A DNA stretch of 64,000 nucleotides, from positions 186,001-250,000 of the IMG/VR virus record IMGVR_UViG_3300042868_007959. One strand, given 5' to 3'. The notes under the pieces were generated by a model. The model had not been told where the DNA came from and did not search any database. It saw only the letters and a list, made by a program, of their open reading frames with translations. Both the position numbers and the translations under genes were made by a program. Numbering within the stretch: position 1 is the stretch's first letter; the number at the start of each line of letters is the position of its first letter. Shown here one piece after another: positions 39,193-59,041 of the stretch.

Positions 39193-39201
39193 ATTTTATA
39201 T

Positions 39202-41653: not shown

Positions 41654-41667
41654 TAAATTAATAAATT

Positions 41668-43725: not shown

Positions 43726-43944
43726 TTATTCAGATTCCACACTAAAACGAGTGGATTTAATAATTTTTTTATCTTCTTTAGACATTTCTCTAATAGTCTC
43801 TTTGTATGCACGTTTTAGGATTCTATCGTATTGACGTTCAGTTATACATGTGCCATCCGTCAACTCAATCGATTTTTCAGTCGCACAAGACGTAAGTGAA
43901 AAAATACTTACAAAGAATACTGTTTTAAAAATTAAATTTTTCAT
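43726..43944 (-). CDS. Small lipoprotein (early)
   Basis: Signal peptide with lipobox LTS-C; TACATTTG at 43965-43972 and TTTG at 43993-43996. Confidence 0.75.
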   Translation of the reverse strand: MKNLIFKTVFFVSIFSLTSCATEKSIELTDGTCITERQYDRILKRAYKETIREMSKEDKKIIKSTRFSVESE

Positions 43945-44066
43945 AGTGTTTGATTTTATATAAACAAATGTATATAAAACATTTTAAACTGCCAAATTTT
44001 TAATTAATTTTTTTTTAATATTTAAAAATAAAACTTTAATATCTATACTTAGATAAAAAGTTTATT

Positions 44067-45323
44067 ATGAGTAAAATTAAAGTATTAGTTGTCCCAAGTG
44101 ACAGAACAGGAGTTTCGTATTATAGATCTACAATACCCCATATTAAATTAGAAGAATATTTTCCGAATGACTTTCATGTTGATATTGATTATGAACCTGA
44201 ATTATTAAATGATAATTTTTTAAAACAGTATGACTTAATACATTATCATAGAACTTTAGGTGACTATAACGATATAAAAGGAATATTAGATAGATGTGAT
44301 AGATTAGGTATCGCAACAATTATGGATATAGATGATCATTGGGCACCAGGATCAGATCACCCAGCTTGGGAAATTATTAAGTCTAATGAGTTAGATAAGA
44401 AAATCCTTAACAATATAAAGGTATCTAAAAATGTCACTACTACAACAAAAATATTTGCTGATGAGATAAGTAAACATAATAAAAATGTATTTGTAATACC
44501 AAATGCAATCGATCCTTTAGAAAAACAATATCAAAATAACTCTGAAAAAAGTGAAAGGATAAGAATTGGATGGTTAGGTGGTTCATCTCATTTAAAGGAT
44601 TTGGAAATATTAAAAGGTTTAATGACTAAATTGAGACATGATGGTTTAATCGATAAAGTACAATTTGTCTTATGTGGATTTGATTTAAGAGGTACTATGA
44701 CTTTAATCGATCAAAAGACTGGACAACAAACACAAAGACCGATAAAACCAAAAGAATCTGTTTGGTATTTATATGAAAAAATATTTACTGATGATTATAA
44801 AATTGTTAGTGAAGAGTATAGAGATTTTTTACTTTCTTTTGAAAATAAAGAATATGAAAATGTTATGAATGAGCCATATAGAAGAGTATGGACAAAACCT
44901 ATTACTTCTTATGCCTCAAATTATAATCTATTTGATATATCATTGGCACCATTAAAAGAGAGTAACTTCAATAAAGTTAAATCACAATTAAAAATAATTG
45001 AGTCTGGATTCCATAAAAAAGCGGTAATCGCACAAGATTTTGGACCTTATCAAATAGATGTCATTGATTCATATGAAAAAGGTGGTACTATAAATCAAAA
45101 CGGTAACGGGTTTTTAGTCCCTACATCAAAAAACCATAAATTATGGTATTCGCATTTAAAAAGATTAATAGAAAATCCTGAATTAATTACTAGTATGGGT
45201 GAAAATCTATATAATACTGTTAATGGTAGATACGATATGAAAACAGTTTGTGGACAAAGAAGTGAATTATATAAAAAATTAGTTTCAGAAAAAAAATATG
45301 TCGATGTTGATTTAGTCAATTAA
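44067..45323 (+). CDS. Glycosyltransferase, GT-B fold (GT4-like)
   Basis: YYR...P, DIDD, PNAID, IGWLGGSSH..DL, DISLAPL...FN..KS.LK..E. Confidence 0.85.
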   Translation: MSKIKVLVVPSDRTGVSYYRSTIPHIKLEEYFPNDFHVDIDYEPELLNDNFLKQYDLIHYHRTLGDYNDIKGILDRCDRLGIATIMDIDDHWAPGSDHPAWEIIKSNELDKKILNNIKVSKNVTTTTKIFADEISKHNKNVFVIPNAIDPLEKQYQNNSEKSERIRIGWLGGSSHLKDLEILKGLMTKLRHDGLIDKVQFVLCGFDLRGTMTLIDQKTGQQTQRPIKPKESVWYLYEKIFTDDYKIVSEEYRDFLLSFENKEYENVMNEPYRRVWTKPITSYASNYNLFDISLAPLKESNFNKVKSQLKIIESGFHKKAVIAQDFGPYQIDVIDSYEKGGTINQNGNGFLVPTSKNHKLWYSHLKRLIENPELITSMGENLYNTVNGRYDMKTVCGQRSELYKKLVSEKKYVDVDLVN

Positions 45324-45352
45324 AATCTTTATTCTTATATAAAAATATTAAT

Positions 45353-45919
45353 ATGGAATTAAAAGAAAAAATTATTAAAAACAGAGAAAAGTTCGACAAG
45401 ACTTCAAAGACTAATGATATATTTAGTGAATCTTTAGTGAATTTTTTAGGTGAAGATTTATTCACTGCACCTGCATCTAATATGGAAAGTATGTACAATG
45501 CATTTCCAGGAGGTTTAATCGATCACATTTTAAAAGTCACCAAATATGCAGTTTATTTAAATGATAGTTTACCTGAAAATATAAGGGTAGATAAAAAATC
45601 TATCATTAAGGTATGTTTCTTACACCAGATAGGTAAGACATTTTTATATAAATTTTGTGAATCTGAATGGCATAGAAATAATTTAGGTAAAATGTATGAT
45701 TTTAATGAGGATTTAATCTCTATGAAAATAGGTGAAAGATCCGCATACTACGCCTTATCTAATGGAGTTGAGTTAACAGAAGAGGAATACCAATCGATTA
45801 TTAATTATGATAAATCGGAAGATGATAAACAATCTAAATGGTATGGATCAACATTATCCACTCTACTAAGACAGGCAAATGAATTATCAATAATAGAATG
45901 TAAAAAAATAAATAAATGA
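45353..45919 (+). CDS. HD-domain-like protein with degenerate HD motif
   Basis: APAS...PGGLIDHILKV and LHQIGK (HD changed to HQ). Confidence 0.7.
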   Translation: MELKEKIIKNREKFDKTSKTNDIFSESLVNFLGEDLFTAPASNMESMYNAFPGGLIDHILKVTKYAVYLNDSLPENIRVDKKSIIKVCFLHQIGKTFLYKFCESEWHRNNLGKMYDFNEDLISMKIGERSAYYALSNGVELTEEEYQSIINYDKSEDDKQSKWYGSTLSTLLRQANELSIIECKKINK

Positions 45920-46494
45920 TAGATAACGATGATTTTGACTCTTCTTTTGCGAAAGACCTTAGAGAGTTAGACGAATTAAATGCGTTGATGTCTCAAATAG
46001 AGACATTAGATAACAAAAATTTATTTGATCTTGATATCAATGATTTTAAAATAAGAACAAAATTTACAAATAATTCTAATAATCCAGATCCTGAATACGC
46101 AAAGATTGGTGATAGTGGATTCGATTTAAGGGCATTTATTTCAGAACCGATTACTTTGAAACCTTTGGAAAGAAAGTTAATACCTACTGGTTTACGTTTT
46201 GAATTAACCCCAAATACTGAATTACAAGTTAGACCTAGAAGTGGTATGGCACTTAAATATGGTATTTCTGTTTTAAACACTCCTGGTACAGTGGACGAGG
46301 GTTACAGAGGTGATGTAGGTATTATCGCAGTTAACTTAAGTAACGATGACTATACGATACAACCAGGGGAAAGAATCGCACAAGGAGTTATTGTCAATGT
46401 AATAGGGCAAGGAATTAGTGATCTTTCCAAAGTAAATAATTTATCTGAAACTGAAAGAGGTGAAGGTGGATTTGGATCAAGTGGTAAATATTAA
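45916..46494 (+). CDS. dut: Trimeric dUTPase
   Basis: GFDLRA, RPRSG, GTVDEGYRG, RIAQ, RGEGGFGSSG. Confidence 0.97.
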   Translation: MIDNDDFDSSFAKDLRELDELNALMSQIETLDNKNLFDLDINDFKIRTKFTNNSNNPDPEYAKIGDSGFDLRAFISEPITLKPLERKLIPTGLRFELTPNTELQVRPRSGMALKYGISVLNTPGTVDEGYRGDVGIIAVNLSNDDYTIQPGERIAQGVIVNVIGQGISDLSKVNNLSETERGEGGFGSSGKY

Positions 46495-46500
46495 TGTTAT

Positions 46501-48075
46501 ATGATTAGTGTAGTATTCTCAACAAGAACTGATAACCAAAAACATATTAACCATTTAAAGCATTCATCAGGATTATCTAAAAATATAGAAATTTTACAAT
46601 ATGTTAATAATGGAGAATATTCGTTAACTGAAATATATAATAGAGGCTTAAAAGATTCTAAATATGACATTGTAATTTTCTGTCATGATGATATTCTATT
46701 TAATAAGGATGGTTGGGGTAAAAAAATAATTAATCACTTTAATCGCAGTGACTTTTCTATCTTAGGTATTGCAGGAACTACTGATATACCTTTATCAGGT
46801 AAATGGTGGGAAGATAGCACCAAAATGGTAGGTATTGTAAAACACTCTAATGGTGGTAGAACTTGGGAATCCAAGTATTCATCGAATTTCGGTGATGATA
46901 TTTTAGAAGTGGTAACTACTGATGGATTATTTTTTGCGTGTCACAAACAAAGAATAAAAACAGATTTCGATGAGAATTTAAAAGGTTTTCACTTCTACGA
47001 CATAGATTTTACTTATAACAATCATCTACTAGGTTCAAAAGTGGGGGTAATCTTTGATGTTAAAGTTACACATATGTCTATAGGTGAGACTAATTCTCAA
47101 TGGGAAAGTAATCGTCTACAGTTTGTTGAGAAATATAAAGATAGTTTACCTCATAAAATTGAACCTGAAATAAGGGTAGAACACAAAGAAATCAATTTAA
47201 AAGAAACCCCAAAATTATCGATAATTATACCAACTAAAGGTAATGTTGATTTTTTAAAACAATGTATTGACTCTATATATGATAATGATGGGTATACTAT
47301 GTTTAAAATTTATATTGCAGATACAGGATCAACTGAAGAAGAAATTAATATCATTAAAGAATATATTTCTAAAATGGGTGATCAGATAAAATTAATTGAG
47401 TACGATTATTATAATTTTGCCAAAATAAATAATGATGTAGTCAATAATCATATAGAAAAAGATACTGAAGTTTTATTATTTTGTAATAATGATATTAAGT
47501 TAGTAAATAATGCAATCACTAAAATGATTGATACCTATAATAAAAATAAAAACACTGTGGGTACTATTGGTGCCAGATTACATTATGGTAACAACACCAT
47601 ACAACACTCAGGAATTATAATGTATATATCACAAAATGGTAGAGTTAATGGACAAAAACGTTTAGTAAATATACATTTATCTCATTATGGGTTGCGTTCA
47701 TACTATAACTACCATGTAGACACTAAAAAAGATGTATTTGGTAATACTGCTGCATTTATGATGATATCTAAAAATCTTTTTTTGGATATTGGTGGCTTTA
47801 ATACTTCATACAATGAATGTTTCGAAGATGTCCAATTAAATGTTGAATGCATTAGTAGAAATAAAGTAAATATATTTGTTGGTGAATCTGTATGTTATCA
47901 CTATGAAAGTATAACTAGAAATAAAAGTGAGGAAAAATTAAAAAGAGAGTCAGAAGACTACACAAAAAGAATAATACCTTTTATTCTTAATAATAAAAAA
48001 ACATTTGACTACTTCACTAATATAAAAAGAAAAGATTTTGAAAATTTAATCGGAAATGGAAACACCCCTAATTAA
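46501..48075 (+). CDS. Two-domain GT-A glycosyltransferase (GT2-like)
   Basis: FCHDDI, FHFYDID; SIIIPTK, ADTGS, FCNNDI, FEDV. Confidence 0.9.
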   Translation: MISVVFSTRTDNQKHINHLKHSSGLSKNIEILQYVNNGEYSLTEIYNRGLKDSKYDIVIFCHDDILFNKDGWGKKIINHFNRSDFSILGIAGTTDIPLSGKWWEDSTKMVGIVKHSNGGRTWESKYSSNFGDDILEVVTTDGLFFACHKQRIKTDFDENLKGFHFYDIDFTYNNHLLGSKVGVIFDVKVTHMSIGETNSQWESNRLQFVEKYKDSLPHKIEPEIRVEHKEINLKETPKLSIIIPTKGNVDFLKQCIDSIYDNDGYTMFKIYIADTGSTEEEINIIKEYISKMGDQIKLIEYDYYNFAKINNDVVNNHIEKDTEVLLFCNNDIKLVNNAITKMIDTYNKNKNTVGTIGARLHYGNNTIQHSGIIMYISQNGRVNGQKRLVNIHLSHYGLRSYYNYHVDTKKDVFGNTAAFMMISKNLFLDIGGFNTSYNECFEDVQLNVECISRNKVNIFVGESVCYHYESITRNKSEEKLKRESEDYTKRIIPFILNNKKTFDYFTNIKRKDFENLIGNGNTPN

Positions 48076-48703
48076 CATATTAACTAGAACATCTAATAGA
48101 CCTAAAGGGTTTAAAATTAATGTTGAAAATATAAAAAATCAGACATACAAAAATATTAACCATATTGTCTGTACTGATAATAAAGATTCTATAAACTATA
48201 TTAAAGAAAATGGTATAGAAAATTTTATTTTTATAGATAGAGAGGAGATTATTAAAAATGATAAATCCCCAAACCCGCACACTGGAGTATATTCACCACA
48301 TAACCTTTATTTTAATGAAATGATAAAATTGGTTAATGAGGGATGGGTAATTTATTTAGATGATGACGATAGATTTACTTCATTAGATACAGTAGAAAAA
48401 ATAGTTAATATTATTAATGAATGTAATGAAGATTTTTTAATCTATTGGAGAATGATTTATTCGAATGGTGTAGTGTTACCAGTGGATATGTCAAATGGTA
48501 GATATCCATTCATAGGTGGTATTGGTGGATCGTGTTTTACTTTTAATAGTAAATATCGAAATTTATCTATATGGGATGGATGGAAATGTGGTGATTTTAG
48601 AGTAATCAAAAAATTACATGATAATATACCAAATAAAGTATGGGTACCTGAAAATTTTATTTTTGTACCATCACAGGGTTTTGGATTAAAAGAAGATTTA
48701 TAA
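48056..48703 (+). CDS. GT-A glycosyltransferase
   Basis: NILTRTSNRP, NQTYKN, YLDDDD, GDF. Confidence 0.8.
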   Translation: METPLINILTRTSNRPKGFKINVENIKNQTYKNINHIVCTDNKDSINYIKENGIENFIFIDREEIIKNDKSPNPHTGVYSPHNLYFNEMIKLVNEGWVIYLDDDDRFTSLDTVEKIVNIINECNEDFLIYWRMIYSNGVVLPVDMSNGRYPFIGGIGGSCFTFNSKYRNLSIWDGWKCGDFRVIKKLHDNIPNKVWVPENFIFVPSQGFGLKEDL

Positions 48704-49344
48704 TGGATTTTTTTAACGATAATAACACAGAAATTTTAATAGTAAATTATAATACACCAGATTATATTATAAGATTACATAGTCAAATAAGAGAATATAT
48801 TTCTTCGGAAATAACAATTAATATTATTGACGGTAGTGATGAAAAATTAAAAATTAGGGGTGATGAGTTCCCTCAATTGAATAAAAGAATGGAACTTATT
48901 TTAAAAGAAGATAAGTTTACTAACCACCATTTAATAGGATACAATATCCATCATGGTCCAGGTATGGATTATGGATTAAAAAAAATACAGAAAAAATATG
49001 TCTTAATTTTAGATTCAGATGTTGAAGTTTGTAACAAAGGTTTATTAAATATTTTTTCTAAAAATATCACAAAAGAATTTTATACTATAGGTAGAATAGT
49101 GACAGTTGATGATGGTGGAAATAATACCCATAAAAATGGGTATAAATATGTTCACCCTAGTACAATGATGTTGGATAGGGAATTTTATATGGGATTTGAT
49201 ATACCTTTTATAAAACACGGTGCACCATGTTTGAATTTTATGAAAAAAATAAACCCTAAATTTTTAATAGATATTAAGAATATTGATGATTATGTGAAAT
49301 ACGTTGGTCGAGGTACTAGAAAATTTTTTGGTATGAATTTATAA
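48703..49344 (+). CDS. GT-A glycosyltransferase
   Basis: IVNYNT, IIDGS, HGPGMD, ILDSD. Confidence 0.8.
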   Translation: MDFFNDNNTEILIVNYNTPDYIIRLHSQIREYISSEITINIIDGSDEKLKIRGDEFPQLNKRMELILKEDKFTNHHLIGYNIHHGPGMDYGLKKIQKKYVLILDSDVEVCNKGLLNIFSKNITKEFYTIGRIVTVDDGGNNTHKNGYKYVHPSTMMLDREFYMGFDIPFIKHGAPCLNFMKKINPKFLIDIKNIDDYVKYVGRGTRKFFGMNL

Positions 49345-49360
49345 AAATATTGAATAAGTT

Positions 49361-50053
49361 ATGAAGATAAGTTTTAATATGGCAACTATGCCTGAAAGGT
49401 TGAGTGGGGCAATAAAAACAATAGAATCTATTTATGATCAGGCAGACATAATAAGGTTGTATTTAAATAAATTTGATGAGGTACCTAATGAATTTAAAAG
49501 AGATAAAATTGTTACTCACATAGGAGATGATTTGAGATCGACAGGTAAATTGTTTTGGGCGTTAAATAAAGATGAGTATTATTTTTGTATTGATGACGAC
49601 TTAATTTATCCACCAACGTATTCTAATGATATGATTAGTAAATTAAATGAGTATAATGATGAAATAATTGTATCGTTACATGGTAAAATTTTAAAAGATG
49701 GTATAAAAAATAGTTATTTTAGGGATTTAAAATTAGGTCTACATTGTTTACATGATGTGAATGTAGATACTTGGGTACATGTAATTGGTAACGGTGTTAG
49801 TACATTTAATACTAATAAAATTGTAATTGATTATAAAAAATTTAAATATAACTATATGGACGATATTATGGTATCATTAGAAGTACAAAAACAAAATAAA
49901 GGTGCTTTAGTGATGGCACATAAATCAAACTATCTATTATATAATGCACCAAAAGGGGGTACATTACATGGTGAATATGCCAATAACGATTCGACTCAAA
50001 CAGAAATGGTTAATAGTATTGAGTGGGAAATATTACAAAAACCTAAAATTTAA
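49361..50053 (+). CDS. GT-A glycosyltransferase
   Basis: MATMPER, CIDDDLIYP, MDDI. Confidence 0.75.
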   Translation: MKISFNMATMPERLSGAIKTIESIYDQADIIRLYLNKFDEVPNEFKRDKIVTHIGDDLRSTGKLFWALNKDEYYFCIDDDLIYPPTYSNDMISKLNEYNDEIIVSLHGKILKDGIKNSYFRDLKLGLHCLHDVNVDTWVHVIGNGVSTFNTNKIVIDYKKFKYNYMDDIMVSLEVQKQNKGALVMAHKSNYLLYNAPKGGTLHGEYANNDSTQTEMVNSIEWEILQKPKI

Positions 50054-50056
50054 AAT

Positions 50057-50764
50057 ATGGAAAAATATATTATAGGAACTGGATGGTGGTGTGATGGTAG
50101 CGGCACCCACACACACAGTAAACACCAACCTTATGTAGATAAAAAAACTAGACAAGTAGAATTTTTTGATTTATGGTATAAATCTGTTATGAAATTTACT
50201 AACCCACATAATATTGTTGTTATTGATTCGAATAGTCCAATAAAACCCAATATTATAGATAAAGAAAATGTTAAATTATTTTCTTTAAATCAAAATTATG
50301 GTGCTGCGGTAGATGGTACCAGTAAAGGTATTTTATCGGGTTGGGATAGAAGTGTTTTACTTTCCGCAAGTATTTCTTTTTTGGAAGATGTAGATTATTT
50401 TGTTTACGTAGAACAAGATTGTGTTTTATGGGGTACAAATATAATTGAGGATATAATTCGTAGTATGGGTGATAAAAAAATTGCGTTAGGTAGTGGAATT
50501 GGTACACCTCAGCCAATACAACAGTCTTTAATTGTAGTAAAAAGAGAATATATTCCTACATTTTTAAAACTAGAGTTTGATAATGATAAAGAAAATTTAA
50601 AAATATCGCCAGAAAATAGATATTATAAACATTTTACAAACGATATAAAATTTTTAGAAATAGATTATGGTAGAAAAAGACCCATAGATTTCAATAAAAA
50701 ACAATTCTATATACAACATTTAAACACTAGTGAATTAGAGCAATATAAAAATAAATTGTTATGA
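50057..50764 (+). CDS. Putative GT-A glycosyltransferase
   Basis: VVIDSNS, YVEQD DxD-like motif; inside GT cluster. Confidence 0.55.
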   Translation: MEKYIIGTGWWCDGSGTHTHSKHQPYVDKKTRQVEFFDLWYKSVMKFTNPHNIVVIDSNSPIKPNIIDKENVKLFSLNQNYGAAVDGTSKGILSGWDRSVLLSASISFLEDVDYFVYVEQDCVLWGTNIIEDIIRSMGDKKIALGSGIGTPQPIQQSLIVVKREYIPTFLKLEFDNDKENLKISPENRYYKHFTNDIKFLEIDYGRKRPIDFNKKQFYIQHLNTSELEQYKNKLL

Positions 50765-51330
50765 GTAAATTTAAGATAAATACGAAGGGTTATTGGGAAA
50801 GTGATACATCATATGGGCATCATTTTGACGGTGGTATATATAATGGTATTGTTTCTTTAATTGAAAAATTTGGGGTGACAAATGTAGTTGATTTTGGATG
50901 TGGGATGGGGGATTATATAAAACGTATTATGGATTTGGGATATAAATGTGAGGCGTATGATGGTAACCCTAACACACCTTTATTAACAAATGGAATAGGT
51001 AAAGTTTTAGATTTTTCCGAAAAGTTTAATCTTAACAGAAAATTTGATTTAGTTATCAGTTTAGAGGTTGGTGAACACATTCCGAAAGAGTATGAAAATA
51101 TTTATATCAATAACATATGTAATCATAGTAATAATTATATACTCATTAGTTGGGCAATTATTGGTCAAAGTGGTGATGGGCACGTAAATTGCCAAAACAA
51201 TGATTATGTCATAAAAGAAATGGATAAAAACGGTTTTGAGTATGACGAATTAAACAGTACCAACTTAAGGAACTTAACCACAAATGCGTGGTGGTTTAAA
51301 AATACAATAATGTTTTTTAAAAAAAAATGA
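50761..51330 (+). CDS. Class I SAM-dependent methyltransferase
   Basis: VVDFGCGMG, FDLVISLEVGEHI, GQ.G.GHVN. Confidence 0.9.
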   Translation: MSKFKINTKGYWESDTSYGHHFDGGIYNGIVSLIEKFGVTNVVDFGCGMGDYIKRIMDLGYKCEAYDGNPNTPLLTNGIGKVLDFSEKFNLNRKFDLVISLEVGEHIPKEYENIYINNICNHSNNYILISWAIIGQSGDGHVNCQNNDYVIKEMDKNGFEYDELNSTNLRNLTTNAWWFKNTIMFFKKK

Positions 51331-51483
51331 GAATAAGTTGATACCCCTTATACTATTCATTTGTGGTATGAAAGAGTGAGTAAAAACATAACTCAAAACA
51401 GAAATCAAATTTATAATAACTTAATATTTAAATTAAAATGAATTTATAGTTTATAAATTGAAAAAATATATTAATATTTAAAT

Positions 51484-52239
51484 ATGAGTAGAAATAGAAG
51501 AAAAAATAAACAACTTTCAGAGGAAGAAATCTTAGAAATGGAAGCGTTTCTTAATAGAAACAATATTGAGGAGGAAAAAGTTTTTAAAACTATAACCATC
51601 AATGTAAAATGTAAGACAGAAAATCAAAAAAAATTAGTAGACTCTATAAAAAATAATGAAATTACTATATGTAGTGGTTTACCTGGATCAGGTAAGACTT
51701 TTTTATCTTGTGCAGAGGCATTAAAACTGGTTACTCTCGAAGAAAGGTATAAAAGAATTGTACTAATAAAATCAATAACCCCATTAAAGAATGAGGAGAT
51801 TGGGCATTTACCTGGAGATTTAAAAGAAAAAATGGCACCGATAATGGAATCTTTTACTGATAATATTAGAAAATTAATTGGTAAAAGTAGAATGGATAAA
51901 TTAATTGAGTTAGGTGTGATAGAAATTGTACCAATCGCATTTGCTAGAGGTAGAAGTATCGATAACTCAGTAATATTAATCGATGAGGCTCAAAATATTA
52001 CATTAGATAATATACGCACACTTATGACTAGAATTGGAGATAATTCTAAAATGGTTATTATGGGTGACGTTAAACAAAAAGATTTAAGAAATAAAAAAGA
52101 TAGTTCTTTAGGTGTAGTATTAGAAAAATTTAAAGATGTTAAAGATTTTGGTTGTGTTGAATTAAGAAATCCAGAGGATGTTATTAGAAATCCTATAATA
52201 AAATTAATCGAAGAGATTTTTGAAACGTTAGAACCTTAA
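51484..52239 (+). CDS. phoH: PhoH-like ATPase
   Basis: GLPGSGKT, GHLPG, RGRS, IDEAQN, TRIG, GD..Q.D, RNP. Confidence 0.95.
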   Translation: MSRNRRKNKQLSEEEILEMEAFLNRNNIEEEKVFKTITINVKCKTENQKKLVDSIKNNEITICSGLPGSGKTFLSCAEALKLVTLEERYKRIVLIKSITPLKNEEIGHLPGDLKEKMAPIMESFTDNIRKLIGKSRMDKLIELGVIEIVPIAFARGRSIDNSVILIDEAQNITLDNIRTLMTRIGDNSKMVIMGDVKQKDLRNKKDSSLGVVLEKFKDVKDFGCVELRNPEDVIRNPIIKLIEEIFETLEP

Positions 52240-52240
52240 T

Positions 52241-52621
52241 ATGATTTTTATAAGTAATAAAATTGAAGTTAGGGATTCGTTAACACACGGTAGAGGTGTT
52301 TTCGCTAAAGAAGATATTAATGAAGGTGAAATCATAGAAAATTGTCATTTTACTATTTTAGAACAACCTTTCATTTCTATCGATAAAAAATTGCAAGAAT
52401 ATGTGTTTGCTTGGCCAAAAACTTCTTTTGCATCAAAATCTGTTGTAGTTTGGGGTTTTGGGTCAATCTATAATCACTCTAAAAATAATAATGCTGATTG
52501 GGTGACTAGTGAAGAAAATAATTTATTTACATTTTTTGCGATAAAGAATATTAAATCGGGTGAAGAGATTTATACTAATTATGGTGAGGGATATGAAAAA
52601 GTAGTAAAAACTGTACAGTAA
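52241..52621 (+). CDS. SET-domain lysine methyltransferase
   Basis: GRGVFAKEDI..GEII, YNHS...NA, IKSGEEIYTNYG..Y. Confidence 0.9.
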   Translation: MIFISNKIEVRDSLTHGRGVFAKEDINEGEIIENCHFTILEQPFISIDKKLQEYVFAWPKTSFASKSVVVWGFGSIYNHSKNNNADWVTSEENNLFTFFAIKNIKSGEEIYTNYGEGYEKVVKTVQ

Positions 52622-52788
52622 TGGGTAAGTATCTATTAAAAACAAAAAAAGACGAAGTGATAAATAATACCACACAAGAAAATTTAGAAGTGGCATTAGA
52701 ATTTTTTTCGTCATTAAAAAAAATAACCGTTAAAGAGTTATTAAAGATATATAAAGTAGAAAAATATGAAAGTAGGAATAACAATTAA
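52621..52788 (+). CDS. Small hypothetical protein, 55 aa (not in ORF track)
   Basis: TAATG coupling to the SET gene; MGKYLLKTKK...LLKIYKVEKYESRNNN fills the gap. Confidence 0.6.
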   Translation: MGKYLLKTKKDEVINNTTQENLEVALEFFSSLKKITVKELLKIYKVEKYESRNNN

Positions 52789-53377
52789 TGGGGTAGTAAG
52801 AGATTTTATGACTAAGTTTGAATCTGTCTACGATAAATACTATCCTTCTGAGTTAGATGAGGAACCAATCAAAAGAGAAATAACTACATCTAACCTGTTA
52901 GATCATTTTAATTTTACTGGTGGAACTGAGGAGTTAAATAAATTTCTTTATGTCGATTCATCGTTAGAGATATTTGGTCACGCTGGTGAAACTAAATTAA
53001 ATTCTGTAGAACATTTAAATCAGTTACATAACCTAATAGAGGATATGGGACATACACCTATTGTAGTTAGTAGGGAATTAAATAATAGTAAACCTGCAAC
53101 TTTATTTTTCTTATCTAAATTATCTGCAAAAATTAATAAAATTATTTTTATTAAAGACTATGATAAAGTTTGGGATTATGTGGATGTAATAATAACTGCA
53201 GATCCTGAAATTTTAGACAATAAACCAAATAGTAAAATAACTATAAAAGTTATTAATCACTATAATAAAGATAGTGAATCAGACTATACTATTTTGGATC
53301 TAAAAGAAATTTTAGACGATAAAAAATTATTAGAAAAAATATTAAATACTAAAACAATCGAATTTGAAGATGTTTAA
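52766..53377 (+). CDS. HAD / 5'(3')-nucleotidase-like protein with degenerate motif I
   Basis: VGITINGVVRD where IGIDxDGV is expected; VVSRE; KPATLFFL. Confidence 0.6.
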   Translation: MKVGITINGVVRDFMTKFESVYDKYYPSELDEEPIKREITTSNLLDHFNFTGGTEELNKFLYVDSSLEIFGHAGETKLNSVEHLNQLHNLIEDMGHTPIVVSRELNNSKPATLFFLSKLSAKINKIIFIKDYDKVWDYVDVIITADPEILDNKPNSKITIKVINHYNKDSESDYTILDLKEILDDKKLLEKILNTKTIEFEDV

Positions 53378-53421
53378 TATTTACTTATCTAAATTTTATA
53401 ATAAAATAATAATAAAAACTT

Positions 53422-53760
53422 ATGGAAAACGATAATTTACTTTTAGAGATTGGCGGAAAAGAACTTTATTTCGATATTGACAAACTTTCAGATGTTGTTA
53501 AAATAGAAAATAAAGTAGTAGACAATGTTATAATAAAAAAAGAATCCATCGATAATGGTGATGATGATATTATGGATGAAAGTGCAATCCAGATAGACAT
53601 CACTAAATATGAATTATATAGAGAGATGATTGCAACTATATTAGGATATATGGACGAAATCGATGATAAAATGGGTTCAGTCGCACTTAATAAAACAAAT
53701 ATCCCATTTAAAATGGCGTATAATACTTTACTAATGAAGGGTATTATAAAAGAATTATAA
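53422..53760 (+). CDS. Hypothetical protein
   Basis: Intact ORF in operon. Confidence 0.6.
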   Translation: MENDNLLLEIGGKELYFDIDKLSDVVKIENKVVDNVIIKKESIDNGDDDIMDESAIQIDITKYELYREMIATILGYMDEIDDKMGSVALNKTNIPFKMAYNTLLMKGIIKEL

Positions 53761-53782
53761 TAACAAAAAAAAATAAACTATT

Positions 53783-54907
53783 ATGAGTGAACAATTAGAA
53801 AAAATTAAAGAATCGATCGAAAAAATAAATAATAAGGATTTTGGTATTTATTTTTTCACTATCGACACAAAAGGTAACCCAACTGCGGGAGTTGCAACAA
53901 TTTACGAACACGTAAAAAAATTAAGAGATTTAGGTTACAACGCACAAATCTTACATGATAAGGATGACTATAAACTTAGGGAAGATGAAAATGGTATTGG
54001 TATTGCGGACTGGTTAGGTGAAGAATACGCTAACTTACCACACATATCTATAGAATCCCAAAAATTACAAGTTGGGACTTCTGATTTTGTTGTTATACCT
54101 GAAGCGTTTGCTAGTATTATGAAACAAACAGTCAACTTCCCATGTAAGAGAATCGTATTTTTACAATCATATGAATATATTTTTGAAATGTTAGAGATCG
54201 GTGAGGGTTGGGAACAGTTTGGTATTAAAGATGTAATTACAACTAACGAAAATTTAAGTAAGTATGTAAATTCATTATTTAGAGGAATGACAACTGATAT
54301 TATTCCATTAGGTATCCCTTCTTATTTTGAGAATGATGGTAAACCTAAAGTACCTACCGTTGCAATGGTTGCGAGAGATAAAAGAGAATTACTGAAAATA
54401 GTAAAAATATTTTATCAAAAATATCCACACTATAGATTTCTTACCTTTAGAGATATGTCAGGGTTACCTAGAAAGACTTTTGCTAATGAATTATCCAAAT
54501 CCTTTTTAAGTGTGTGGATTGATGAGTTATCAAGTTTTGGCACATTCCCATTAGAATCGATAAAAACTAACACACCTGTTATCGGTAAAATACCTAGAAT
54601 GGTTCCTGAGTGGATGGGGACAATCGATGAAGCAGGTAATCTTAATTTAAATGATAATGGTATATGGACGGCAAATCTTAATTCTATACCAGATATCATT
54701 GCTACTATGGTAGGACTTTATTTGGAGGACGCTTTACCACAAAATATTATGAATGGTATGGTTGAATGGTCAGATAAATATTCTACAGAGGACTCAGATA
54801 AAATTTTGGGTGAAGTTTATGACAAAATTTTTAAGAGAAGAATTGTTGAATTGGAATTTAGTTATCAACAAATTTCTAATACAGAAGAAAACGTAGAGGT
54901 TAAGTAA
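53783..54907 (+). CDS. Glycosyltransferase, GT-B fold
   Basis: G...IYEH, VVIPE, SFGTFPLE. Confidence 0.7.
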   Translation: MSEQLEKIKESIEKINNKDFGIYFFTIDTKGNPTAGVATIYEHVKKLRDLGYNAQILHDKDDYKLREDENGIGIADWLGEEYANLPHISIESQKLQVGTSDFVVIPEAFASIMKQTVNFPCKRIVFLQSYEYIFEMLEIGEGWEQFGIKDVITTNENLSKYVNSLFRGMTTDIIPLGIPSYFENDGKPKVPTVAMVARDKRELLKIVKIFYQKYPHYRFLTFRDMSGLPRKTFANELSKSFLSVWIDELSSFGTFPLESIKTNTPVIGKIPRMVPEWMGTIDEAGNLNLNDNGIWTANLNSIPDIIATMVGLYLEDALPQNIMNGMVEWSDKYSTEDSDKILGEVYDKIFKRRIVELEFSYQQISNTEENVEVK

Positions 54908-54937
54908 AATAATAACATAAAATTAAAGTAAAAAAAT

Positions 54938-55714
54938 ATGAATAGTATTTCATTAATAGTACCAGTACATAAATTAGAAAAAACATATTTAGATTCTTGT
55001 ATAACAAGTATTAAAAATCAAAAAGAAAAACCTGATGAAGTTTTATTTGTCACATCAAATGATACAGAATTAAAAGAATATCTTAATAGTTATGATTTCG
55101 ATCAAATTAAAGATATTGTTAGAATTGTAGAAAATGAAAGTGGAGATTACGGATTCCAATCACAAATGAATTACGGTGTAAAAGAAAGTAAATCAGAATA
55201 TTTTACTTTTGTAGAATATGATGATGAAATATCCCCAATATGGATTAAAAATGGTAAAGAGTATTCTGAACATTATCCTGAGGTAGGAGTATTTTTACCT
55301 ATAATATATGAAACAGATGAAAATGGTAGATTTATCTCATTCACTAATGAGAGTGTTTGGGCAAAAGATTTTTCTGAAGTAAGTGGATACTTAGATAACA
55401 ACGCACTACAAAGAGTTCAAAACTTTAATTTTGACGGTATGGTTGTTAAAAAAAGTATTTATGAAGATAATGGTGGGTTAAAATCAAATATGAAATTAAC
55501 ATTCACATATGAATTTTTATTAAGAATGACATATTTTTCTGTTCCAGTTATGGTAATCCCTAAATTAGGTTATAAACACACAAACAATAGAGAAGGTTCA
55601 CTTTTTGTGGAATATAAATCAACTATAGATGTATTAGAAAGTAAATTTTGGGTTAACAAAGCTAAAAAAGAATATTTTTACACACAAGATAGGGGAATAA
55701 CATACGAAGTATAA
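54938..55714 (+). CDS. GT-A glycosyltransferase (GT2-like)
   Basis: SLIVPVH, MNYG, VEYDD, EFLLR, GYKH. Confidence 0.8.
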   Translation: MNSISLIVPVHKLEKTYLDSCITSIKNQKEKPDEVLFVTSNDTELKEYLNSYDFDQIKDIVRIVENESGDYGFQSQMNYGVKESKSEYFTFVEYDDEISPIWIKNGKEYSEHYPEVGVFLPIIYETDENGRFISFTNESVWAKDFSEVSGYLDNNALQRVQNFNFDGMVVKKSIYEDNGGLKSNMKLTFTYEFLLRMTYFSVPVMVIPKLGYKHTNNREGSLFVEYKSTIDVLESKFWVNKAKKEYFYTQDRGITYEV

Positions 55715-55721
55715 ATTTTTT

Positions 55722-56456
55722 ATGTTAGAAGAACCTAAGAAAAGAGGTAGAAAGAGAACAAACAATTTATATTTTGGTCCTGAACAGGAAGAAGCAGTAG
55801 TTAAATTTTTAACATGTGAGTCATATAACGAAAGAAATAAAATTTATAATGAATATCTAAAAGCCCCAATAGATAAGATGGTAGAATCCATCATAAGACG
55901 ATATAAATTATATAGGAAAGAGTATGAGTATGAAGATGTTCATTCAGACACTCTTTCTTTTTTAATAACTAAAATGCACAATTTTAAACCAGATAAGAAT
56001 AAAAAAGCTTATTCCTATTTTGGTACGATATGTAAACATTATCTTTTAGGTCAACTTATAAAAGACGATAAGAAGTTAAAATCTGATGTATCCTATGAAG
56101 ATGTATATCGGACTGTAGAAACTATGGAAGAATTTACTTATACCATAGATGATGACAAAATACAATTAGATACTTTTATAGATGAAATTTCTGCAAGTAT
56201 TAAAGGTGAAATGAAATATAATAAATTATCTGAAATAGAACTTAAAGTTGGTTTAGCATTGACTACTATTTTAGATAACTGGGAAACTATATTTGAACAA
56301 ATTGAAAGTGGTAACAAATATAACAAAAATTTAATTTTATCTTATATAAGAGAAATATCTGATCTATCTACTAAAGATATAAGAGTAGGTATGAGAAGAT
56401 TTAAGAAGATTTATGGTTTATTGAAAAACGATAAATTAGAAGACGATTCTTTGTAA
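55722..56456 (+). CDS. Late-transcription sigma factor (T4 gp55-like)
   Basis: FKPDKNKKAYSYFGTICKHY resembles gp55 region 2 FDP..S.NPFAYFT.I. Confidence 0.7.
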   Translation: MLEEPKKRGRKRTNNLYFGPEQEEAVVKFLTCESYNERNKIYNEYLKAPIDKMVESIIRRYKLYRKEYEYEDVHSDTLSFLITKMHNFKPDKNKKAYSYFGTICKHYLLGQLIKDDKKLKSDVSYEDVYRTVETMEEFTYTIDDDKIQLDTFIDEISASIKGEMKYNKLSEIELKVGLALTTILDNWETIFEQIESGNKYNKNLILSYIREISDLSTKDIRVGMRRFKKIYGLLKNDKLEDDSL

Positions 56457-56493
56457 AAATTTATTATTAGATATTTATAGTTAAACAATAGAC

Positions 56494-56877
56494 ATGAGTA
56501 GACCTAAAAAAACTAAAATCAATTTAGATAAAAATAGTTTACAGGAATTAATGCAAGAAATTTATAATGATTGTAGTAATATAATGAATAGTGCTAGAAG
56601 AGAAATAAATGAAAGAAAAGTTAGAGTTAATATAGAAGACGTTAATGACGAATACCAAATTGGTAAAGTTAATAATGAAACTCTTAAAATTTTAGAAACC
56701 ACTATTGATAAAAAAATAGCTTTAGCAAAATTACAATCTCAGATACTTGGTAATAAAAGTAATGAAGATGATGGCAATAATGTAGGTAATGGTATTACAG
56801 AAGAAGATAAAAATATTCTAAGAGAATTATTTAAAGAAAAGGCTGGTAATAAAAATACTAAATACGATATAGATTAA
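56494..56877 (+). CDS. Hypothetical coiled-coil late protein
   Basis: Late motif 56471-56478. Confidence 0.55.
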   Translation: MSRPKKTKINLDKNSLQELMQEIYNDCSNIMNSARREINERKVRVNIEDVNDEYQIGKVNNETLKILETTIDKKIALAKLQSQILGNKSNEDDGNNVGNGITEEDKNILRELFKEKAGNKNTKYDID

Positions 56878-56878
56878 A

Positions 56879-58585: not shown

Positions 58586-58587
58586 TT

Positions 58588-59037: not shown

Positions 59038-59041
59038 AATT

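What the first reader, a model, noticed from the sequence alone, without database searches (positions are those of the whole stretch)
44067..55714. Eight glycosyltransferases plus a methyltransferase directly upstream of the late sigma factor
Seen: two GT-B and six GT-A-like genes, none with an obvious TM anchor and with no flippase, polymerase or nucleotide-sugar synthesis gene in the window. A tight run of four short GTs plus a SAM methyltransferase (48056-51330) looks like an exchangeable block. Inference: a soluble pathway building a methyl-capped, variable oligosaccharide on virion proteins or DNA, rather than host serotype conversion.
Basis: partly seen in the sequence, partly recalled or inferred. 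Interest (0 to 1): 0.6.

Follow-up and report, generated by a model that had tools for sequence, protein, structure and literature searches.

The report
Swappable sugar-transferase island in jumbo phage
A large freshwater-type phage carries four conserved soluble sugar-transferase genes flanking a hot spot where small cassettes of further sugar-modifying genes are exchanged even between near-identical phages; such islands are already known in big aquatic phages, and what they glycosylate is still unproven.

Summary
Window 44067-55714 has eight glycosyltransferase (GT) genes carrying nine GT domains, plus a SAM methyltransferase. None has a TM anchor. The 254-kb phage record has no sugar-nucleotide, flippase, polymerase or priming gene.

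The run is not uniform. An HD protein, a dUTPase, PhoH, a SET protein and two unknown ORFs are interspersed. It splits into two parts:
- **Core frame.** GT-B 44067, the N-terminal domain of 46501, Agt/AmGGT-like GT-B 53783 and GT2 54938 are kept at 30-99% identity in about 40 related contigs.
- **Hot spot.** The stretch between the dUTPase/46501 N-domain and PhoH varies freely.

A sister contig that is 96-97% identical on both sides replaces window 48704-51461 (three GTs plus the methyltransferase) with an aminotransferase-like, acetyltransferase, GT92-like and unknown cassette. Other relatives carry GDP-fucose synthesis, GT10/GT11, sulfo- and methyltransferases there: 162 protein clusters from 28 loci plus the window, none polytopic.

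So a soluble pathway with an exchangeable block is supported. The target is not shown. I favour a phage-made (virion) protein (about 0.45) over host envelope precursors (about 0.3). DNA is unlikely, as no hydroxymethylase was found.

Hypervariable GT islands are published for pelagi- and cyanomyophages, and four core GT groups for "moraphages", probably this lineage. This is a new member of a known kind.

The parts
44067..45323 (+). Core soluble GT-B glycosyltransferase (GT4-like, retaining type). First gene of a 9-gene operon-like run.
   Evidence: PHROG 7162 at E 4e-39. More than 7,700 metagenome homologues, the best 120 listed at 71-99% identity. AF2 pLDDT 80; Foldseek hits ManT, GlgM, MshA, BshA. 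Present at 39-99% identity in relatives wherever the locus reaches that far.
45353..45919 (+). HD-domain-like protein. Core left-flank gene, probably nucleotide metabolism rather than glycan work.
   Evidence: Pfam HD at 17.7 bits, below the cut-off. Conserved at 44-98% identity in relatives.
45916..46494 (+). dUTPase with an N-terminal extension of about 50 aa. Left anchor of the island.
   Evidence: PF00692 at 1e-23; NF001862 at 2e-49. Used as anchor.
46501..48075 (+). Two-domain GT-A glycosyltransferase. The N-terminal PF13712 domain (to about 47160) is core. The C-terminal GT2 domain is variable.
   Evidence: PF13712 at aa 14-212 and PF00535 at aa 240-381. In L018, L019, L020, L032, L035, L066 and L069, tblastn homology covers only aa 1 to about 217-229. 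DNA homology ends at window 47150-47162.
48056..48703 (+). Small GT2 glycosyltransferase, accessory. Shared only with the sister contig.
   Evidence: PF00535 at 25.2 bits against a 23.3 cut-off. Among the loci fetched, found only in the sister contig: L013 at 96% among the 55 loci, and again in L062.
48703..49344 (+). Probable small GT2 (sub-threshold), cassette gene.
   Evidence: PF00535 at 21.4 bits over profile positions 2-129. DSD motif aligned to the DXD region of the core GT2. Absent from all related loci.
49361..50053 (+). GT45-like GT-A, cassette gene. Related to the KfiA-like C-terminal domain of heparosan synthase, which I recall to be an alpha-HexNAc transferase type.
   Evidence: PDB 8vh7 residues 301-526 at E 3e-23; KfiA 5z8b at 3e-13. 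Absent from all related loci.
50057..50764 (+). GT-A-fold protein of no named family, cassette gene.
   Evidence: No Pfam, PHROG, NCBIfam or PDB hit. The Atlas model resembles Nucleotid_trans, GT8 and GT2 at TM 0.62-0.74. Only 67 homologues found. The Aeromonas homologue sits in an O-antigen-type cluster.
50761..51330 (+). Class I SAM-dependent methyltransferase, cassette gene.
   Evidence: PF13489 at 3e-7. Atlas neighbours are viral Methyltransf_23/11 clusters. Only a 30% relative, in L017.
48704..51461 (.). Cassette that is swapped relative to the 96-97% identical sister contig.
   Evidence: blastn gives 96% identity over 41655-48703 and 96-97% over 51462-62242. Between them lie an unrelated 2,851 bp in L013 (7127-9977). 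The L013 cassette is DegT-like, PglD-like acetyltransferase, GT92/GT2_4 and one unknown.
51484..52239 (+). PhoH-like ATPase. Right anchor of the island, core gene.
   Evidence: PF02562 at 8e-60. 49 related loci found.
52241..52621 (+). SET-domain protein. Accessory gene, not part of the glycan pathway.
   Evidence: PF00856 at 1e-17. Present only in L013 (95%) and L018 (71%).
52766..53760 (+). Two core ORFs of unknown function (203 and 112 aa) preceding the core GT pair.
   Evidence: No family hit. Conserved at 29-99% identity in about 40 loci.
53783..54907 (+). Core GT-B glycosyltransferase related to Actinobacillus Agt/AmGGT, a cytoplasmic glycan-elongating alpha-glucosyltransferase.
   Evidence: 1,969 homologues at E<=0.001, the best 120 listed all at 81-98% identity. 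Profile A2 against 8xsg at E 8e-21, near full length. AF2 pLDDT 88; Foldseek hits 8xsg, then GtfA, BshA, SdgB. Function of 8xsg taken from PMC12159676.
54938..55714 (+). Core GT2 glycosyltransferase.
   Evidence: PF00535 at 1e-15. Conserved at 33-98% identity in 31 loci. Best PDB hit is GalT1 5hea at 1.5e-6.
55722..56456 (+). gp55-like (late) sigma factor, core gene. Downstream neighbour, not part of the pathway.
   Evidence: PHROG 234 at 3.7e-5. Sigma70_r2 sub-threshold in 15 of 19 family members. The only PDB hit is T4 gp55 at E 0.35.

Best explanation
The region is a two-layer cytoplasmic glycosylation locus of a T4-like jumbo phage, probably a 'moraphage' infecting Bacteroidota.

**Shown.**
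- Four GT genes form a frame conserved throughout the lineage: GT4-like 44067, the PF13712 domain of 46501, Agt/AmGGT-like 53783 and GT2 54938.
- Between the dUTPase/46501 N-domain and PhoH lies a recombination hot spot. Cassettes of tailoring enzymes are exchanged there, even between phages 96-97% identical on both flanks, and once inside a gene at a domain junction.
- In this genome the island is a minimal version. It holds the GT2 C-domain of 46501, two small GT2s, a GT45-like enzyme, an unnamed GT-A and a SAM methyltransferase.
- All of these are soluble, and the phage has no sugar-nucleotide genes.

**Inferred.**
- The core enzymes build a conserved inner glycan on a conserved acceptor, using host UDP- or GDP-sugars.
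- The cassette enzymes add a strain-specific, possibly O-methylated outer part. This would give co-circulating phages different glycan 'serotypes'.
- The acceptor is most likely a phage-made protein that ends up in the virion, as in chloroviruses, mimiviruses and mycobacteriophages.

My confidence in the core-plus-cassette architecture is about 0.9. The 0.45 given below is for the whole statement, including the virion-protein target.
For: **Architecture**
- Presence/absence matrix over 55 loci.
- Sharp breakpoints against the sister contig.
- Island length runs from 407 bp (an empty site in L051) to more than 12 kb.
- 321 island proteins fall into 162 clusters, 104 of them singletons.
- Island content in relatives includes GDP-mannose dehydratase, epimerases, GT2/10/11, FkbM and other methyltransferases, DegT, sulfotransferases, FdtA and PIG-L.

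**Soluble, cytoplasmic pathway**
- No TM segment in the window GTs.
- No polytopic protein among 312 island proteins of relatives, nor in the whole 254-kb record.
- No Bac_transf.

**Acceptor conserved and probably phage-borne**
- The four core GTs are kept at 30-99% identity whatever the island holds, and even where the island is absent (L051).
- Homologue counts are 1,969 and more than 7,700 for the core GTs, against 67 for cassette gene 50057.

**Nearest characterised relatives of the core enzymes**
- These are cytoplasmic enzymes that extend protein-linked or soluble glycans: AmGGT/Agt at E 8e-21, with GtfA and SdgB as fold neighbours, and GalT1 of the Fap1 pathway.
- For 44067 they are ManT, GlgM, MshA and BshA.

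**Viral fold neighbours**
- For 44067 these are GT1-family proteins of uncultured tailed phages and giant viruses. The one entry named DNA alpha-glucosyltransferase ranks 39th.

**From my own knowledge, not tested here**
- Soluble virus-encoded GT sets whose target has been shown experimentally act on virion proteins (PBCV-1 Vp54, mimivirus fibrils, mycobacteriophages Che8 and Corndog) or on DNA.
Against: - No glycan, acceptor or activity is observed. Everything about the target is inference.
- GT4 and GT2 are huge families and the PDB is biased, so the 'protein-glycosylation' flavour of the best hits is weak evidence.
- No recognisable protein-priming enzyme was found, such as a GT41/NGT.
- No Ser/Thr-rich acceptor tract stands out in the proteome.
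- The upstream regions of the GT operon, PhoH and 52766 lack the ATATTTAT motif. That motif precedes the structural genes and 50 of 138 upstream regions overall. The core GT pair appears to be co-transcribed with the sigma gene. The GTs are therefore probably not late-class genes, which fits host remodelling at least as well.
- Cassette genes have homologues in bacterial O-antigen-type clusters.
- Published opinion for analogous islands in pelagi- and cyanomyophages favours host surface modification (PMC7029224, PMC12801897).
- The record is only 78% complete.
Confidence: 0.45

Rival explanations
1. Host envelope remodelling. The soluble phage GTs and the methyltransferase act at the inner face of the membrane on the host's own undecaprenyl-linked O-antigen, capsule or O-glycan intermediates. 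The host flippase and ligase then export the altered glycan. The surface change blocks superinfection or stops progeny sticking to debris. The cassettes differ because host strains offer different acceptor glycans.
For: - Bacterial O-antigen GTs are also soluble or peripheral, so the lack of TM segments does not exclude this.
- The cassette gene 50057 family occurs in an Aeromonas cluster with an O-antigen ligase/polymerase-like gene, GT4s and a pyruvyl transferase.
- The island chemistry in relatives (GDP-fucose synthesis, GT10/GT11, acetamido-sugar enzymes) is typical O-antigen or capsule chemistry.
- The GT operons lack the putative late-promoter motif.
- This is the interpretation given for pelagimyophage and cyanomyophage islands.
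Against: - Four GTs are conserved across the whole lineage at 30-99% identity, regardless of island content and presumably of host strain. That is hard to reconcile with strain-variable host acceptors.
- No phage-encoded priming transferase, flippase, polymerase, ligase or Gtr-type membrane protein occurs in about 30 islands or in the 254-kb record.
- No experimental precedent known to me exists for a lytic phage doing this with soluble GTs. Known serotype converters are temperate and use membrane Gtr proteins or O-acetylases (own knowledge).
Confidence: 0.3
2. DNA hypermodification. The GTs glycosylate hydroxymethyl-pyrimidines in phage DNA to evade restriction. The neighbouring dUTPase and HD protein would shape the nucleotide pool.
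For: - A GT-B gene sits beside the dUTPase and an HD-like gene.
- Distant homologues of 44067 in phapecoctaviruses lie next to DNA polymerase genes.
- DNA glycosylation is a proven role of soluble phage GTs (own knowledge; cited in PMC12619734).
Against: - No thymidylate-synthase-family hydroxymethylase in the record. The Tet_JBP model found nothing either, but it rang in no control genome, so that result is uninformative.
- Both GT-B models match GT4 enzymes best. T4 alpha/beta-GT are not among the listed top PDB hits. An entry named DNA alpha-glucosyltransferase ranks only 39th among viral models.
- Nine GT domains here, and fucosyl-, sulfo-, methyl- and acetyl-transferases plus deoxy-sugar pathways in relatives, far exceed the mono- to trisaccharide DNA modifications I know of.
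- The dUTPase is an ordinary dut (NF001862 at 2e-49).
Confidence: 0.05
3. No single pathway. The GTs are an accumulation of independent auxiliary genes in a permissive insertion site, a general 'plastic region' between replication and late modules. They may act on unrelated acceptors, make a free or secreted methylated oligosaccharide, or be partly non-functional.
For: - The same hot spot and its surroundings take up unrelated cargo: a SET gene, the 39860/41668 pair, an IMPDH-like gene and a DUF6794 protein in L076.
- The GTs show no paralogy with one another.
- The best fold hit of 44067 is ManT, which makes a cytoplasmic methylmannose polysaccharide.
Against: - The island cargo is overwhelmingly glycan-related in about 30 independent loci.
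- The genes are packed with overlapping or short-gap junctions on one strand.
- All GT2 matches of the genome are concentrated here.
- All ORFs are intact. The core GTs are highly conserved, including invariant catalytic-region columns.
Confidence: 0.12

Closest known systems
Hypervariable glycosyltransferase/LPS-gene islands of aquatic T4-like myophages: the pelagimyophage 'host recognition cluster' (PMC7029224), and the large cyanomyophages P-SSM2, S-SCSM1 and S-SCSM2R (PMC12801897)
   Same: - T4-like (gp23) aquatic phage with a conserved core and a non-syntenic island.
- The island is rich in GTs (GT2, GT10, GT11 and others) and nucleotide-sugar epimerases or dehydratases.
- Function is untested in all cases.
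   Different: - The position differs. Here it lies between the dUTPase and PhoH, upstream of the sigma gene, not between VrlC and gp14 among tail fibres.
- There are no tail-fibre genes inside it.
- Four lineage-wide core GTs flank it.
- The host is probably Bacteroidota, not SAR11 or cyanobacteria.
- This genome's island is a minimal GT-plus-methyltransferase version without sugar-nucleotide genes.
'Moraphages' (Perez-Hernandez et al., Arch Virol 2025, PMC12619734)
   Same: - Jumbo size of 200-307 kb, aquatic and mostly freshwater, with Bacteroidota hosts predicted.
- Core genes include dUTPase, PhoH, a sigma factor, and T4-like sheath, baseplate and major capsid protein.
- Four core orthogroups are annotated as GTs.
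- Hc1 (histone H1-like) and DnaJ genes are present, and both occur in this record.
   Different: - In the passages I read (sections 11 and 13, plus the places matching glycosyltransferase, glycosylation, PhoH and sigma), the paper lists the GT orthogroups but gives no analysis of a variable island, cassette exchange or GT classification. I did not search it for 'island' or 'hypervariable'.
- Membership by phylogeny could not be tested, because their sequences were not at hand.
Chlorovirus PBCV-1 capsid glycosylation machinery (A064R, A111/114R, A075L; GMD and GMER), and mimivirus fibril glycosylation clusters (from my own knowledge)
   Same: - Virus-encoded soluble cytoplasmic GTs, some with several domains.
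- A methyltransferase that caps a sugar.
- GDP-mannose dehydratase and GDP-fucose synthase type enzymes, seen here in relatives.
- A conserved inner glycan with variable, clade-specific outer decoration.
   Different: - Those are eukaryotic giant viruses.
- The glycan on their capsid or fibrils has been shown chemically, whereas nothing is shown here.
- No detectable sequence relationship was tested.
Mycobacteriophage virion glycosylation (Freeman et al. 2023; known to me from citations, paper not held)
   Same: Lytic or temperate tailed phages with small sets of soluble GTs that glycosylate capsid and tail-tube proteins.
   Different: - Gram-positive-type host.
- Fewer GTs, placed near the structural genes.
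- No hypervariable island with sugar-nucleotide pathways, as far as I know.
Actinobacillus NGT/Agt cytoplasmic N-glycosylation (Agt, AmGGT; PDB 8xsg; PMC12159676)
   Same: The core GT-B 53783 is a full-length homologue (profile E 8e-21, best fold match) of this GT4 enzyme. That enzyme elongates glucose chains on glycopeptides or oligosaccharides in the cytoplasm.
   Different: - Only 18-19% identity.
- No NGT (GT41) partner in the phage record.
- Donor and acceptor are unknown.
Heparosan synthase PmHS2 / KfiA (GT45) and chondroitin synthase K4CP
   Same: - 49361 matches the KfiA-like domain at 3e-23.
- 46501 is a two-GT-A-domain protein like these bifunctional synthases, with a weak K4CP hit at 7e-5.
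   Different: - The phage proteins are separate, small and soluble.
- There is no evidence for polymer synthesis or export.

Membership tests
Hypervariable GT island of aquatic T4-like myophages (pelagi-/cyanomyophage type) | T4-like core genome (gp23-type capsid, sheath, gp55-like sigma) | tested here: met
   PF07068 Gp23 in syntenic relatives. The gp23 fragment is 43-45% identical to the capsid proteins of Flavobacterium and Microcystis T4-like phages. Sheath and DNA polymerase PHROGs match.
Hypervariable GT island of aquatic T4-like myophages (pelagi-/cyanomyophage type) | Non-syntenic island between conserved modules, differing between close relatives | tested here: met
   162 clusters from 28 loci plus the window, and a cassette swap in a 96-97% identical background.
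Hypervariable GT island of aquatic T4-like myophages (pelagi-/cyanomyophage type) | Island lies in the structural region with tail-fibre genes (the HRC between VrlC and gp14) | tested here: not met
   Here the island lies between the dUTPase and PhoH, with no fibre genes inside. The definition is taken from PMC7029224.
Moraphage lineage | Jumbo genome with four core GT orthogroups, plus dUTPase, PhoH, sigma, Hc1 and DnaJ genes | tested here: met
   Record of at least 254 kb. Four core GT genes. Hc1 at 3e-21 and DnaJ at 2.5e-28. Paper content.
Moraphage lineage | Placement inside the moraphage clade in MCP, TerL and PolB trees | not testable with these tools
Virus-encoded virion-protein glycosylation systems (chlorovirus, mimivirus, mycobacteriophage) | Soluble virus-encoded GTs without a membrane or lipid-carrier step | tested here: met
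Virus-encoded virion-protein glycosylation systems (chlorovirus, mimivirus, mycobacteriophage) | Glycan covalently attached to a capsid, tail or fibre protein | not testable with these tools
   Needs virions and mass spectrometry. A proteome scan for Ser/Thr-rich tracts gave nothing distinctive.
Virus-encoded virion-protein glycosylation systems (chlorovirus, mimivirus, mycobacteriophage) | Co-expression with structural (late) genes | tested here: inconclusive
   The ATATTTAT motif precedes structural genes but not the GT operons.
T-even-type DNA glycosylation | dCMP/dUMP hydroxymethylase (ThyA family) or TET/JBP oxygenase to create the acceptor base | tested here: not met
   No PF00303 match. 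PF12851 also found nothing, but that model rang in no control genome. The record is 78% complete.
T-even-type DNA glycosylation | GT of the T4 alpha-GT/beta-GT type | tested here: not met
   Both GT-B models match GT4 enzymes best. An entry named DNA alpha-glucosyltransferase ranks only 39th in the viral library.
Gtr-type serotype conversion of temperate phages | Membrane proteins GtrA (flippase), GtrB and a polytopic type-specific Gtr | tested here: not met
   No protein with more than 3 TM-like segments in 254 kb. None in the islands of relatives.
NGT/Agt cytoplasmic N-glycosylation | Agt-like GT4 elongating enzyme | tested here: met
   Profile A2 against 8xsg at E 8e-21. Best Foldseek match, TM 0.67/0.73.
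NGT/Agt cytoplasmic N-glycosylation | HMW1C/NGT (GT41) priming enzyme | tested here: not met
   No PF13844 match in the record.
CAZy GT45-like (KfiA / heparosan synthase C-domain) for ORF 49361-50053 | Sequence homology over the catalytic domain | tested here: met
   8vh7 residues 301-526 at E 3e-23; 5z8b at 3e-13. Activity and donor were not testable.

The most novel reading that the evidence does not exclude
A jumbo phage lineage of Gram-negative (Bacteroidota) hosts runs its own cytoplasmic protein-glycosylation system. Four conserved GTs would lay a common inner glycan on virion proteins. A recombination hot spot would shuffle tailoring cassettes (GTs, methyl-, sulfo- and acetyl-transferases, deoxy-sugar pathways), even by swapping a domain inside a GT gene. 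Co-occurring, otherwise near-identical phages would then wear different glycan coats. This would be a phage counterpart of bacterial O-antigen diversity and of chlorovirus and mimivirus glycan clades.
Probability: 0.4. Interest if true: 0.7.

Novelty: new member of a known kind. Interest (0 to 1): 0.45.

Why it matters
GT-rich islands are among the most common unexplained cargo of large aquatic phages, and their target has never been shown.

This locus offers a clean handle on the question:
- A small all-soluble set of enzymes that needs only host nucleotide sugars.
- A conserved four-gene frame that can be expressed on its own.
- A natural pair of phages, 96-97% identical on both sides of the island, that differ in one 2.8-kb cassette.

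If the acceptor is a virion protein, tailed phages of Gram-negative hosts would have strain-variable glycan coats. That would bear on adsorption, on recognition by defences and grazers, and on phage typing.

If the acceptor is the host envelope, this would document serotype conversion by a lytic jumbo phage without any membrane component.

Either result would re-annotate thousands of metagenomic genes. The two core GT-B families have 1,969 and more than 7,700 homologues.

Tried and rejected
- **Near-identical DNA in GenBank phages.** None found.
- **T4 late-promoter consensus TATAAATA.** Not enriched: 27 found against 25 expected. I replaced it with a de novo k-mer analysis. The variant AATATTTAAA upstream of 44067 and PhoH is not conserved in relatives, so I dropped it as a promoter call.
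- **Conserved element TTTAAAC(Y)(R)CCAAA upstream of 44067.** Too few other copies to interpret.
- **Close relatives of cassette genes 49361 and 50057 in IMG/VR.** None found.
- **hhalign of the small GTs against the core GT2 profile.** Not significant. It served only to locate the DXD motif.
- **PDB sequence searches.** Nothing for 44067, 50057 or 48703.
- **Paralogy among the eight GTs.** None, so they are not a recent tandem expansion.
- **Scan for a Ser/Thr-rich acceptor protein.** Nothing beyond ordinary fibre-like composition.
- **Sequencing-run search** for expression or recruitment data.
- **Freeman et al. 2023.** Not held in the library.
- **Complex prediction and the large representative-protein search.** Not used, because no specific binding claim or absence claim depended on them.

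Full report
**Context.** The window is bases 186001-250000 of a 253,879-bp IMG/VR virus record. CheckV puts it at 78% complete, with linear ends. GC is about 28%. It is a distant T4-like myovirus.
- Syntenic relatives carry a Gp23 capsid gene just downstream.
- The capsid fragment at the window's end is 43-45% identical to those of Flavobacterium phage 'immuto', a Microcystis phage and a metagenomic huge phage.
- Sheath and family-B polymerase PHROGs are present.
- The record also encodes an Hc1 histone-H1-like protein and a DnaJ protein.

Those two genes, together with jumbo size, core dUTPase, PhoH and sigma genes, and four core GT groups, match the published description of 'moraphages'. These are freshwater jumbo phages with predicted Bacteroidota hosts (PMC12619734). 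A Bacteroidota host also fits the promoter data: the -7 promoter element TAnnTTTG occurs in 27 of 138 upstream regions, and TATATTTG occurs 16 times against 1.7 expected. That this element is the Bacteroidota -7 consensus is my own knowledge.

**Checking the observation.** Fifteen + strand ORFs fill 44067-55714 with overlaps or gaps of tens of bases. The exceptions are three intergenic gaps: upstream of 44067, of PhoH and of 52766.

| ORF | Call | Evidence |
|---|---|---|
| 44067 | GT-B | PHROG GT at 4e-39. AF2 pLDDT 80. Best PDB folds are GT4 retaining enzymes ManT, GlgM, MshA, BshA, PglA |
| 53783 | GT-B | No family hit as a single sequence. A 25-sequence profile hits 8xsg at 8e-21 over nearly its whole length. 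The pLDDT-88 model matches 8xsg best, then GtfA, BshA, PimA, SdgB |
| 46501 | GT-A | Two domains, PF13712 and PF00535 |
| 48056 | GT-A | PF00535 above the cut-off |
| 48703 | GT-A | PF00535 at 21.4 bits against a 23.3 cut-off, with a DSD motif in the expected place |
| 49361 | GT-A | Heparosan synthase B residues 301-526 at 3e-23; KfiA at 3e-13. GT45-like |
| 50057 | GT-A | No sequence family. The Atlas model resembles GT-A folds at TM 0.62-0.74 |
| 54938 | GT-A | PF00535 at 1e-15 |
| 50761 | Methyltransferase | Class I SAM methyltransferase |

None has a hydrophobic stretch that could be a TM anchor, and none is a paralogue of another. All five PF00535 matches of the 254-kb record fall in this region.

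- an HD-like protein;
- an ordinary dUTPase (NF001862 at 2e-49);
- PhoH;
- a SET-domain protein;
- two unknown ORFs.

ORF 55722 is a plausible gp55-like sigma factor, on moderate evidence.

**What the comparison with relatives shows.** I fetched 49 loci anchored on PhoH, 13 anchored on the dUTPase, and six metagenome contigs carrying the 53783 family. I then scored every window ORF against them. Three classes emerge.

1. **Core.** ORFs 52766, 53422, 53783, 54938, 55722 and the genes downstream are present in about 40 loci at 30-99% identity.
   - On the left side, 44067, 45353, 45916 and the first 220 or so residues of 46501 are present wherever the locus reaches that far.
   - Core status also shows in the database counts: 1,969 homologues for 53783 (the best 120 listed all at 81-98% identity) and more than 7,700 for 44067, against 67 for cassette gene 50057.
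2. **Variable.**
   - 48056 occurs only in one sister contig.
   - 48703, 49361 and 50057 occur in none.
   - The methyltransferase has only a 30% relative.
3. **Accessory and unrelated.** The SET gene.

**The sister contig.** IMGVR_UViG_3300042878_001709 (L013/L062) compares with the window as follows:

| Window stretch | Comparison with the sister contig |
|---|---|
| 36042-39943 | 99% identical |
| 41655-48703 | 96% identical |
| 48704-51461 | replaced by 2,851 unrelated bases |
| 51462-56397 (compared in L062) | 97% identical; 96% over 51462-62242 in L013 |

The replacement encodes a DegT-like fragment, a PglD-like hexapeptide acetyltransferase, a GT92/GT2_4 transferase and an unknown protein. 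This is a clean cassette exchange.

In more distant relatives, homology stops inside 46501 at window 47150-47162. That is the junction between its two GT domains, so the C-terminal domain is itself exchangeable. The homologues are 511-811 aa long with different C-terminal parts.

**Size and content of the island.** The distance from the dUTPase to PhoH ranges widely:
- 407 bp in L051, an empty site where the core GTs are still present;
- 4,990 bp in this window;
- more than 12 kb in others.

Across 28 loci plus the window, 321 island proteins form 162 clusters, 104 of them singletons.

The cargo in relatives is overwhelmingly glycan chemistry:
- GDP-mannose 4,6-dehydratase, the largest cluster, present in 17 loci;
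- a second epimerase/reductase;
- NTP transferases, DegT aminotransferases, FdtA and PIG-L;
- hexapeptide acyltransferases;
- GT2, GT10 and GT11;
- FkbM and other methyltransferases;
- sulfotransferases.

This genome's island is therefore a minimal, GT-only version. The record has no Epimerase or NTP_transferase family. No homologue of any relative's island protein occurs elsewhere in the record. It must rely on host nucleotide sugars.

**How it probably works.** The following is shown.
- The pathway is cytoplasmic and soluble.
- No polytopic membrane protein exists among 312 island proteins.
- No protein with more than three TM-like segments exists in the whole record.
- There is no phosphoglycosyl transferase.

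The following is inferred.
- Four GTs are conserved irrespective of the island, and even where the island is absent. They should therefore act on an acceptor that is itself conserved in the lineage, most simply a phage protein.
- The island enzymes would add a strain-specific outer part.

The closest characterised relatives of the core enzymes are cytoplasmic enzymes that extend glycans on proteins or soluble acceptors.
- AmGGT/Agt belongs to the Actinobacillus NGT/Agt adhesin N-glycosylation system (PMC12159676).
- The fold neighbours GtfA and SdgB are protein O-GlcNAc transferases.
- The best PDB hit of the core GT2 is GalT1 of Streptococcus parasanguinis, which I recall belongs to the Fap1 glycosylation pathway.

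This is suggestive only, because GT2 and GT4 are vast families.

The parallel with chloroviruses and mimiviruses is close, but it rests on my own knowledge, not on a test here. Those viruses have soluble multi-domain GTs, a sugar methyltransferase, GMD/GMER enzymes, and a conserved inner glycan with clade-specific outer parts.

**Against the virion reading.**
- No priming enzyme such as NGT was found.
- No obvious acceptor tract was found.
- The GT operons lack the ATATTTAT motif. That motif precedes the sheath, fibre and other structural genes, and occurs in 50 of 138 upstream regions against 3.4 expected.
- The core GT pair seems to be co-transcribed with the sigma gene, so expression is probably pre-late.
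- Cassette gene 50057 has a bacterial homologue inside an O-antigen-type cluster.
- For the analogous islands of pelagimyophages and cyanomyophages, authors favour host surface modification against co-infection.

The host-envelope model therefore remains a serious rival. DNA glycosylation is unlikely:
- no ThyA-family hydroxymethylase, and no hit to the TET/JBP model, which also rang in no control genome;
- GT4-type rather than T4-type folds;
- a glycan chemistry far too elaborate.

**Comparison and novelty.** The kind is known. Hypervariable GT islands in aquatic T4-like phages are published (PMC7029224, PMC12801897). The four core GT orthogroups of moraphages are listed in PMC12619734.

What I found here, and did not see in the passages of those papers that I read:
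- the core-frame-plus-cassette architecture at a dUTPase-PhoH hot spot;
- an exchange between phages 96-97% identical on both flanks, with base-level breakpoints;
- a domain-level swap inside a two-domain GT;
- the family assignments: Agt/AmGGT-like, GT45-like and GT4-like.

I rate it a new member of a known kind, of moderate interest. The value lies in offering a compact, all-soluble system in which the long-open question of the target can be tested by heterologous expression.

**Limits.**
- The record is incomplete.
- All functional statements beyond fold or family are inferred.

Noticed in passing
window 39860-43725: Two paralogous large ORFs (597 and 685 aa, similar N-termini) with no Pfam or PHROG hit lie just upstream of the GT operon. 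They are preceded by the putative late motif ATATTTAT, 25 nt before the ATG. ORF 39860 is replaced by a divergent version in the sister contig that is 99% identical up to 39943 and 96% from 41655. It is absent from L063. Both ORFs are absent from L035 and L028. ORF 41668 has a Thr/Ser-rich tract near its C-terminus. They may be variable structural or receptor-binding proteins, or a candidate glycan acceptor.
   Followed up: partly
window 52241-52621: A 126-aa SET-domain (lysine methyltransferase-like) gene overlaps the PhoH stop. It is accessory: present only in the sister contig (95%) and L018 (71%).
   Followed up: partly
whole record; window examples upstream of 12074-14923(-), 7636-10632(-), 31292-36436(-), 26327-29194(-): Two upstream motif classes. 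ATATTTAT occurs in 50 of 138 upstream regions against 3.4 expected, before structural genes, so it is a putative late promoter. TAnnTTTG occurs in 27 of 138, for example before the DNA polymerase. It matches what I recall as the Bacteroidota -7 element, so these are putative host-sigma early promoters and a clue to the host.
   Followed up: partly
G000:C1:115887-116051(-) and 105610-105798(-), outside the window: An Hc1 histone-H1-like gene (3e-21) and a DnaJ-domain gene (2.5e-28). Both were reported as hallmarks of 'moraphages'.
   Followed up: partly
L051:9594-10001: A distant relative has the dUTPase only 407 bp from PhoH. This is an empty island site, yet it keeps homologues of the core GTs 44067, 53783 and 54938.
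   Followed up: partly
L076:5978-14473: The island of a related phage carries three sulfotransferases, a GT10 fucosyltransferase with FucT_N, FkbM and Methyltransf_24 methyltransferases, and an 836-aa GT2. This implies sulfated, methylated, fucosylated glycans.
   Followed up: partly
window 31292-36436 (-): A 1,714-aa protein with about nine tandem copies of a PHROG 25468 domain and a pre-neck-appendage-like C-terminus. Local GC rises to 42% against 28% elsewhere. Probably a repeat-rich fibre.
   Followed up: no
window 43984-43998: The element TTTAAAC(T/C)(G/A)CCAAA, about 80 nt upstream of 44067, is conserved in L013, L035, L028 and L019 despite an otherwise diverged spacer. Only one other exact copy exists in the record. 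Function unknown.
   Followed up: partly
L006 (Klebsiella phage KP2025, 34574-36116 of PP919962.1): Distant homologues (22-27% identity) of GT-B 44067 occur in phapecoctavirus-like phages of Klebsiella and Escherichia and in some Campylobacter phages. In KP2025 the homologue is paired with a second GT, and the pair lies just upstream of DNA polymerase genes.
   Followed up: no
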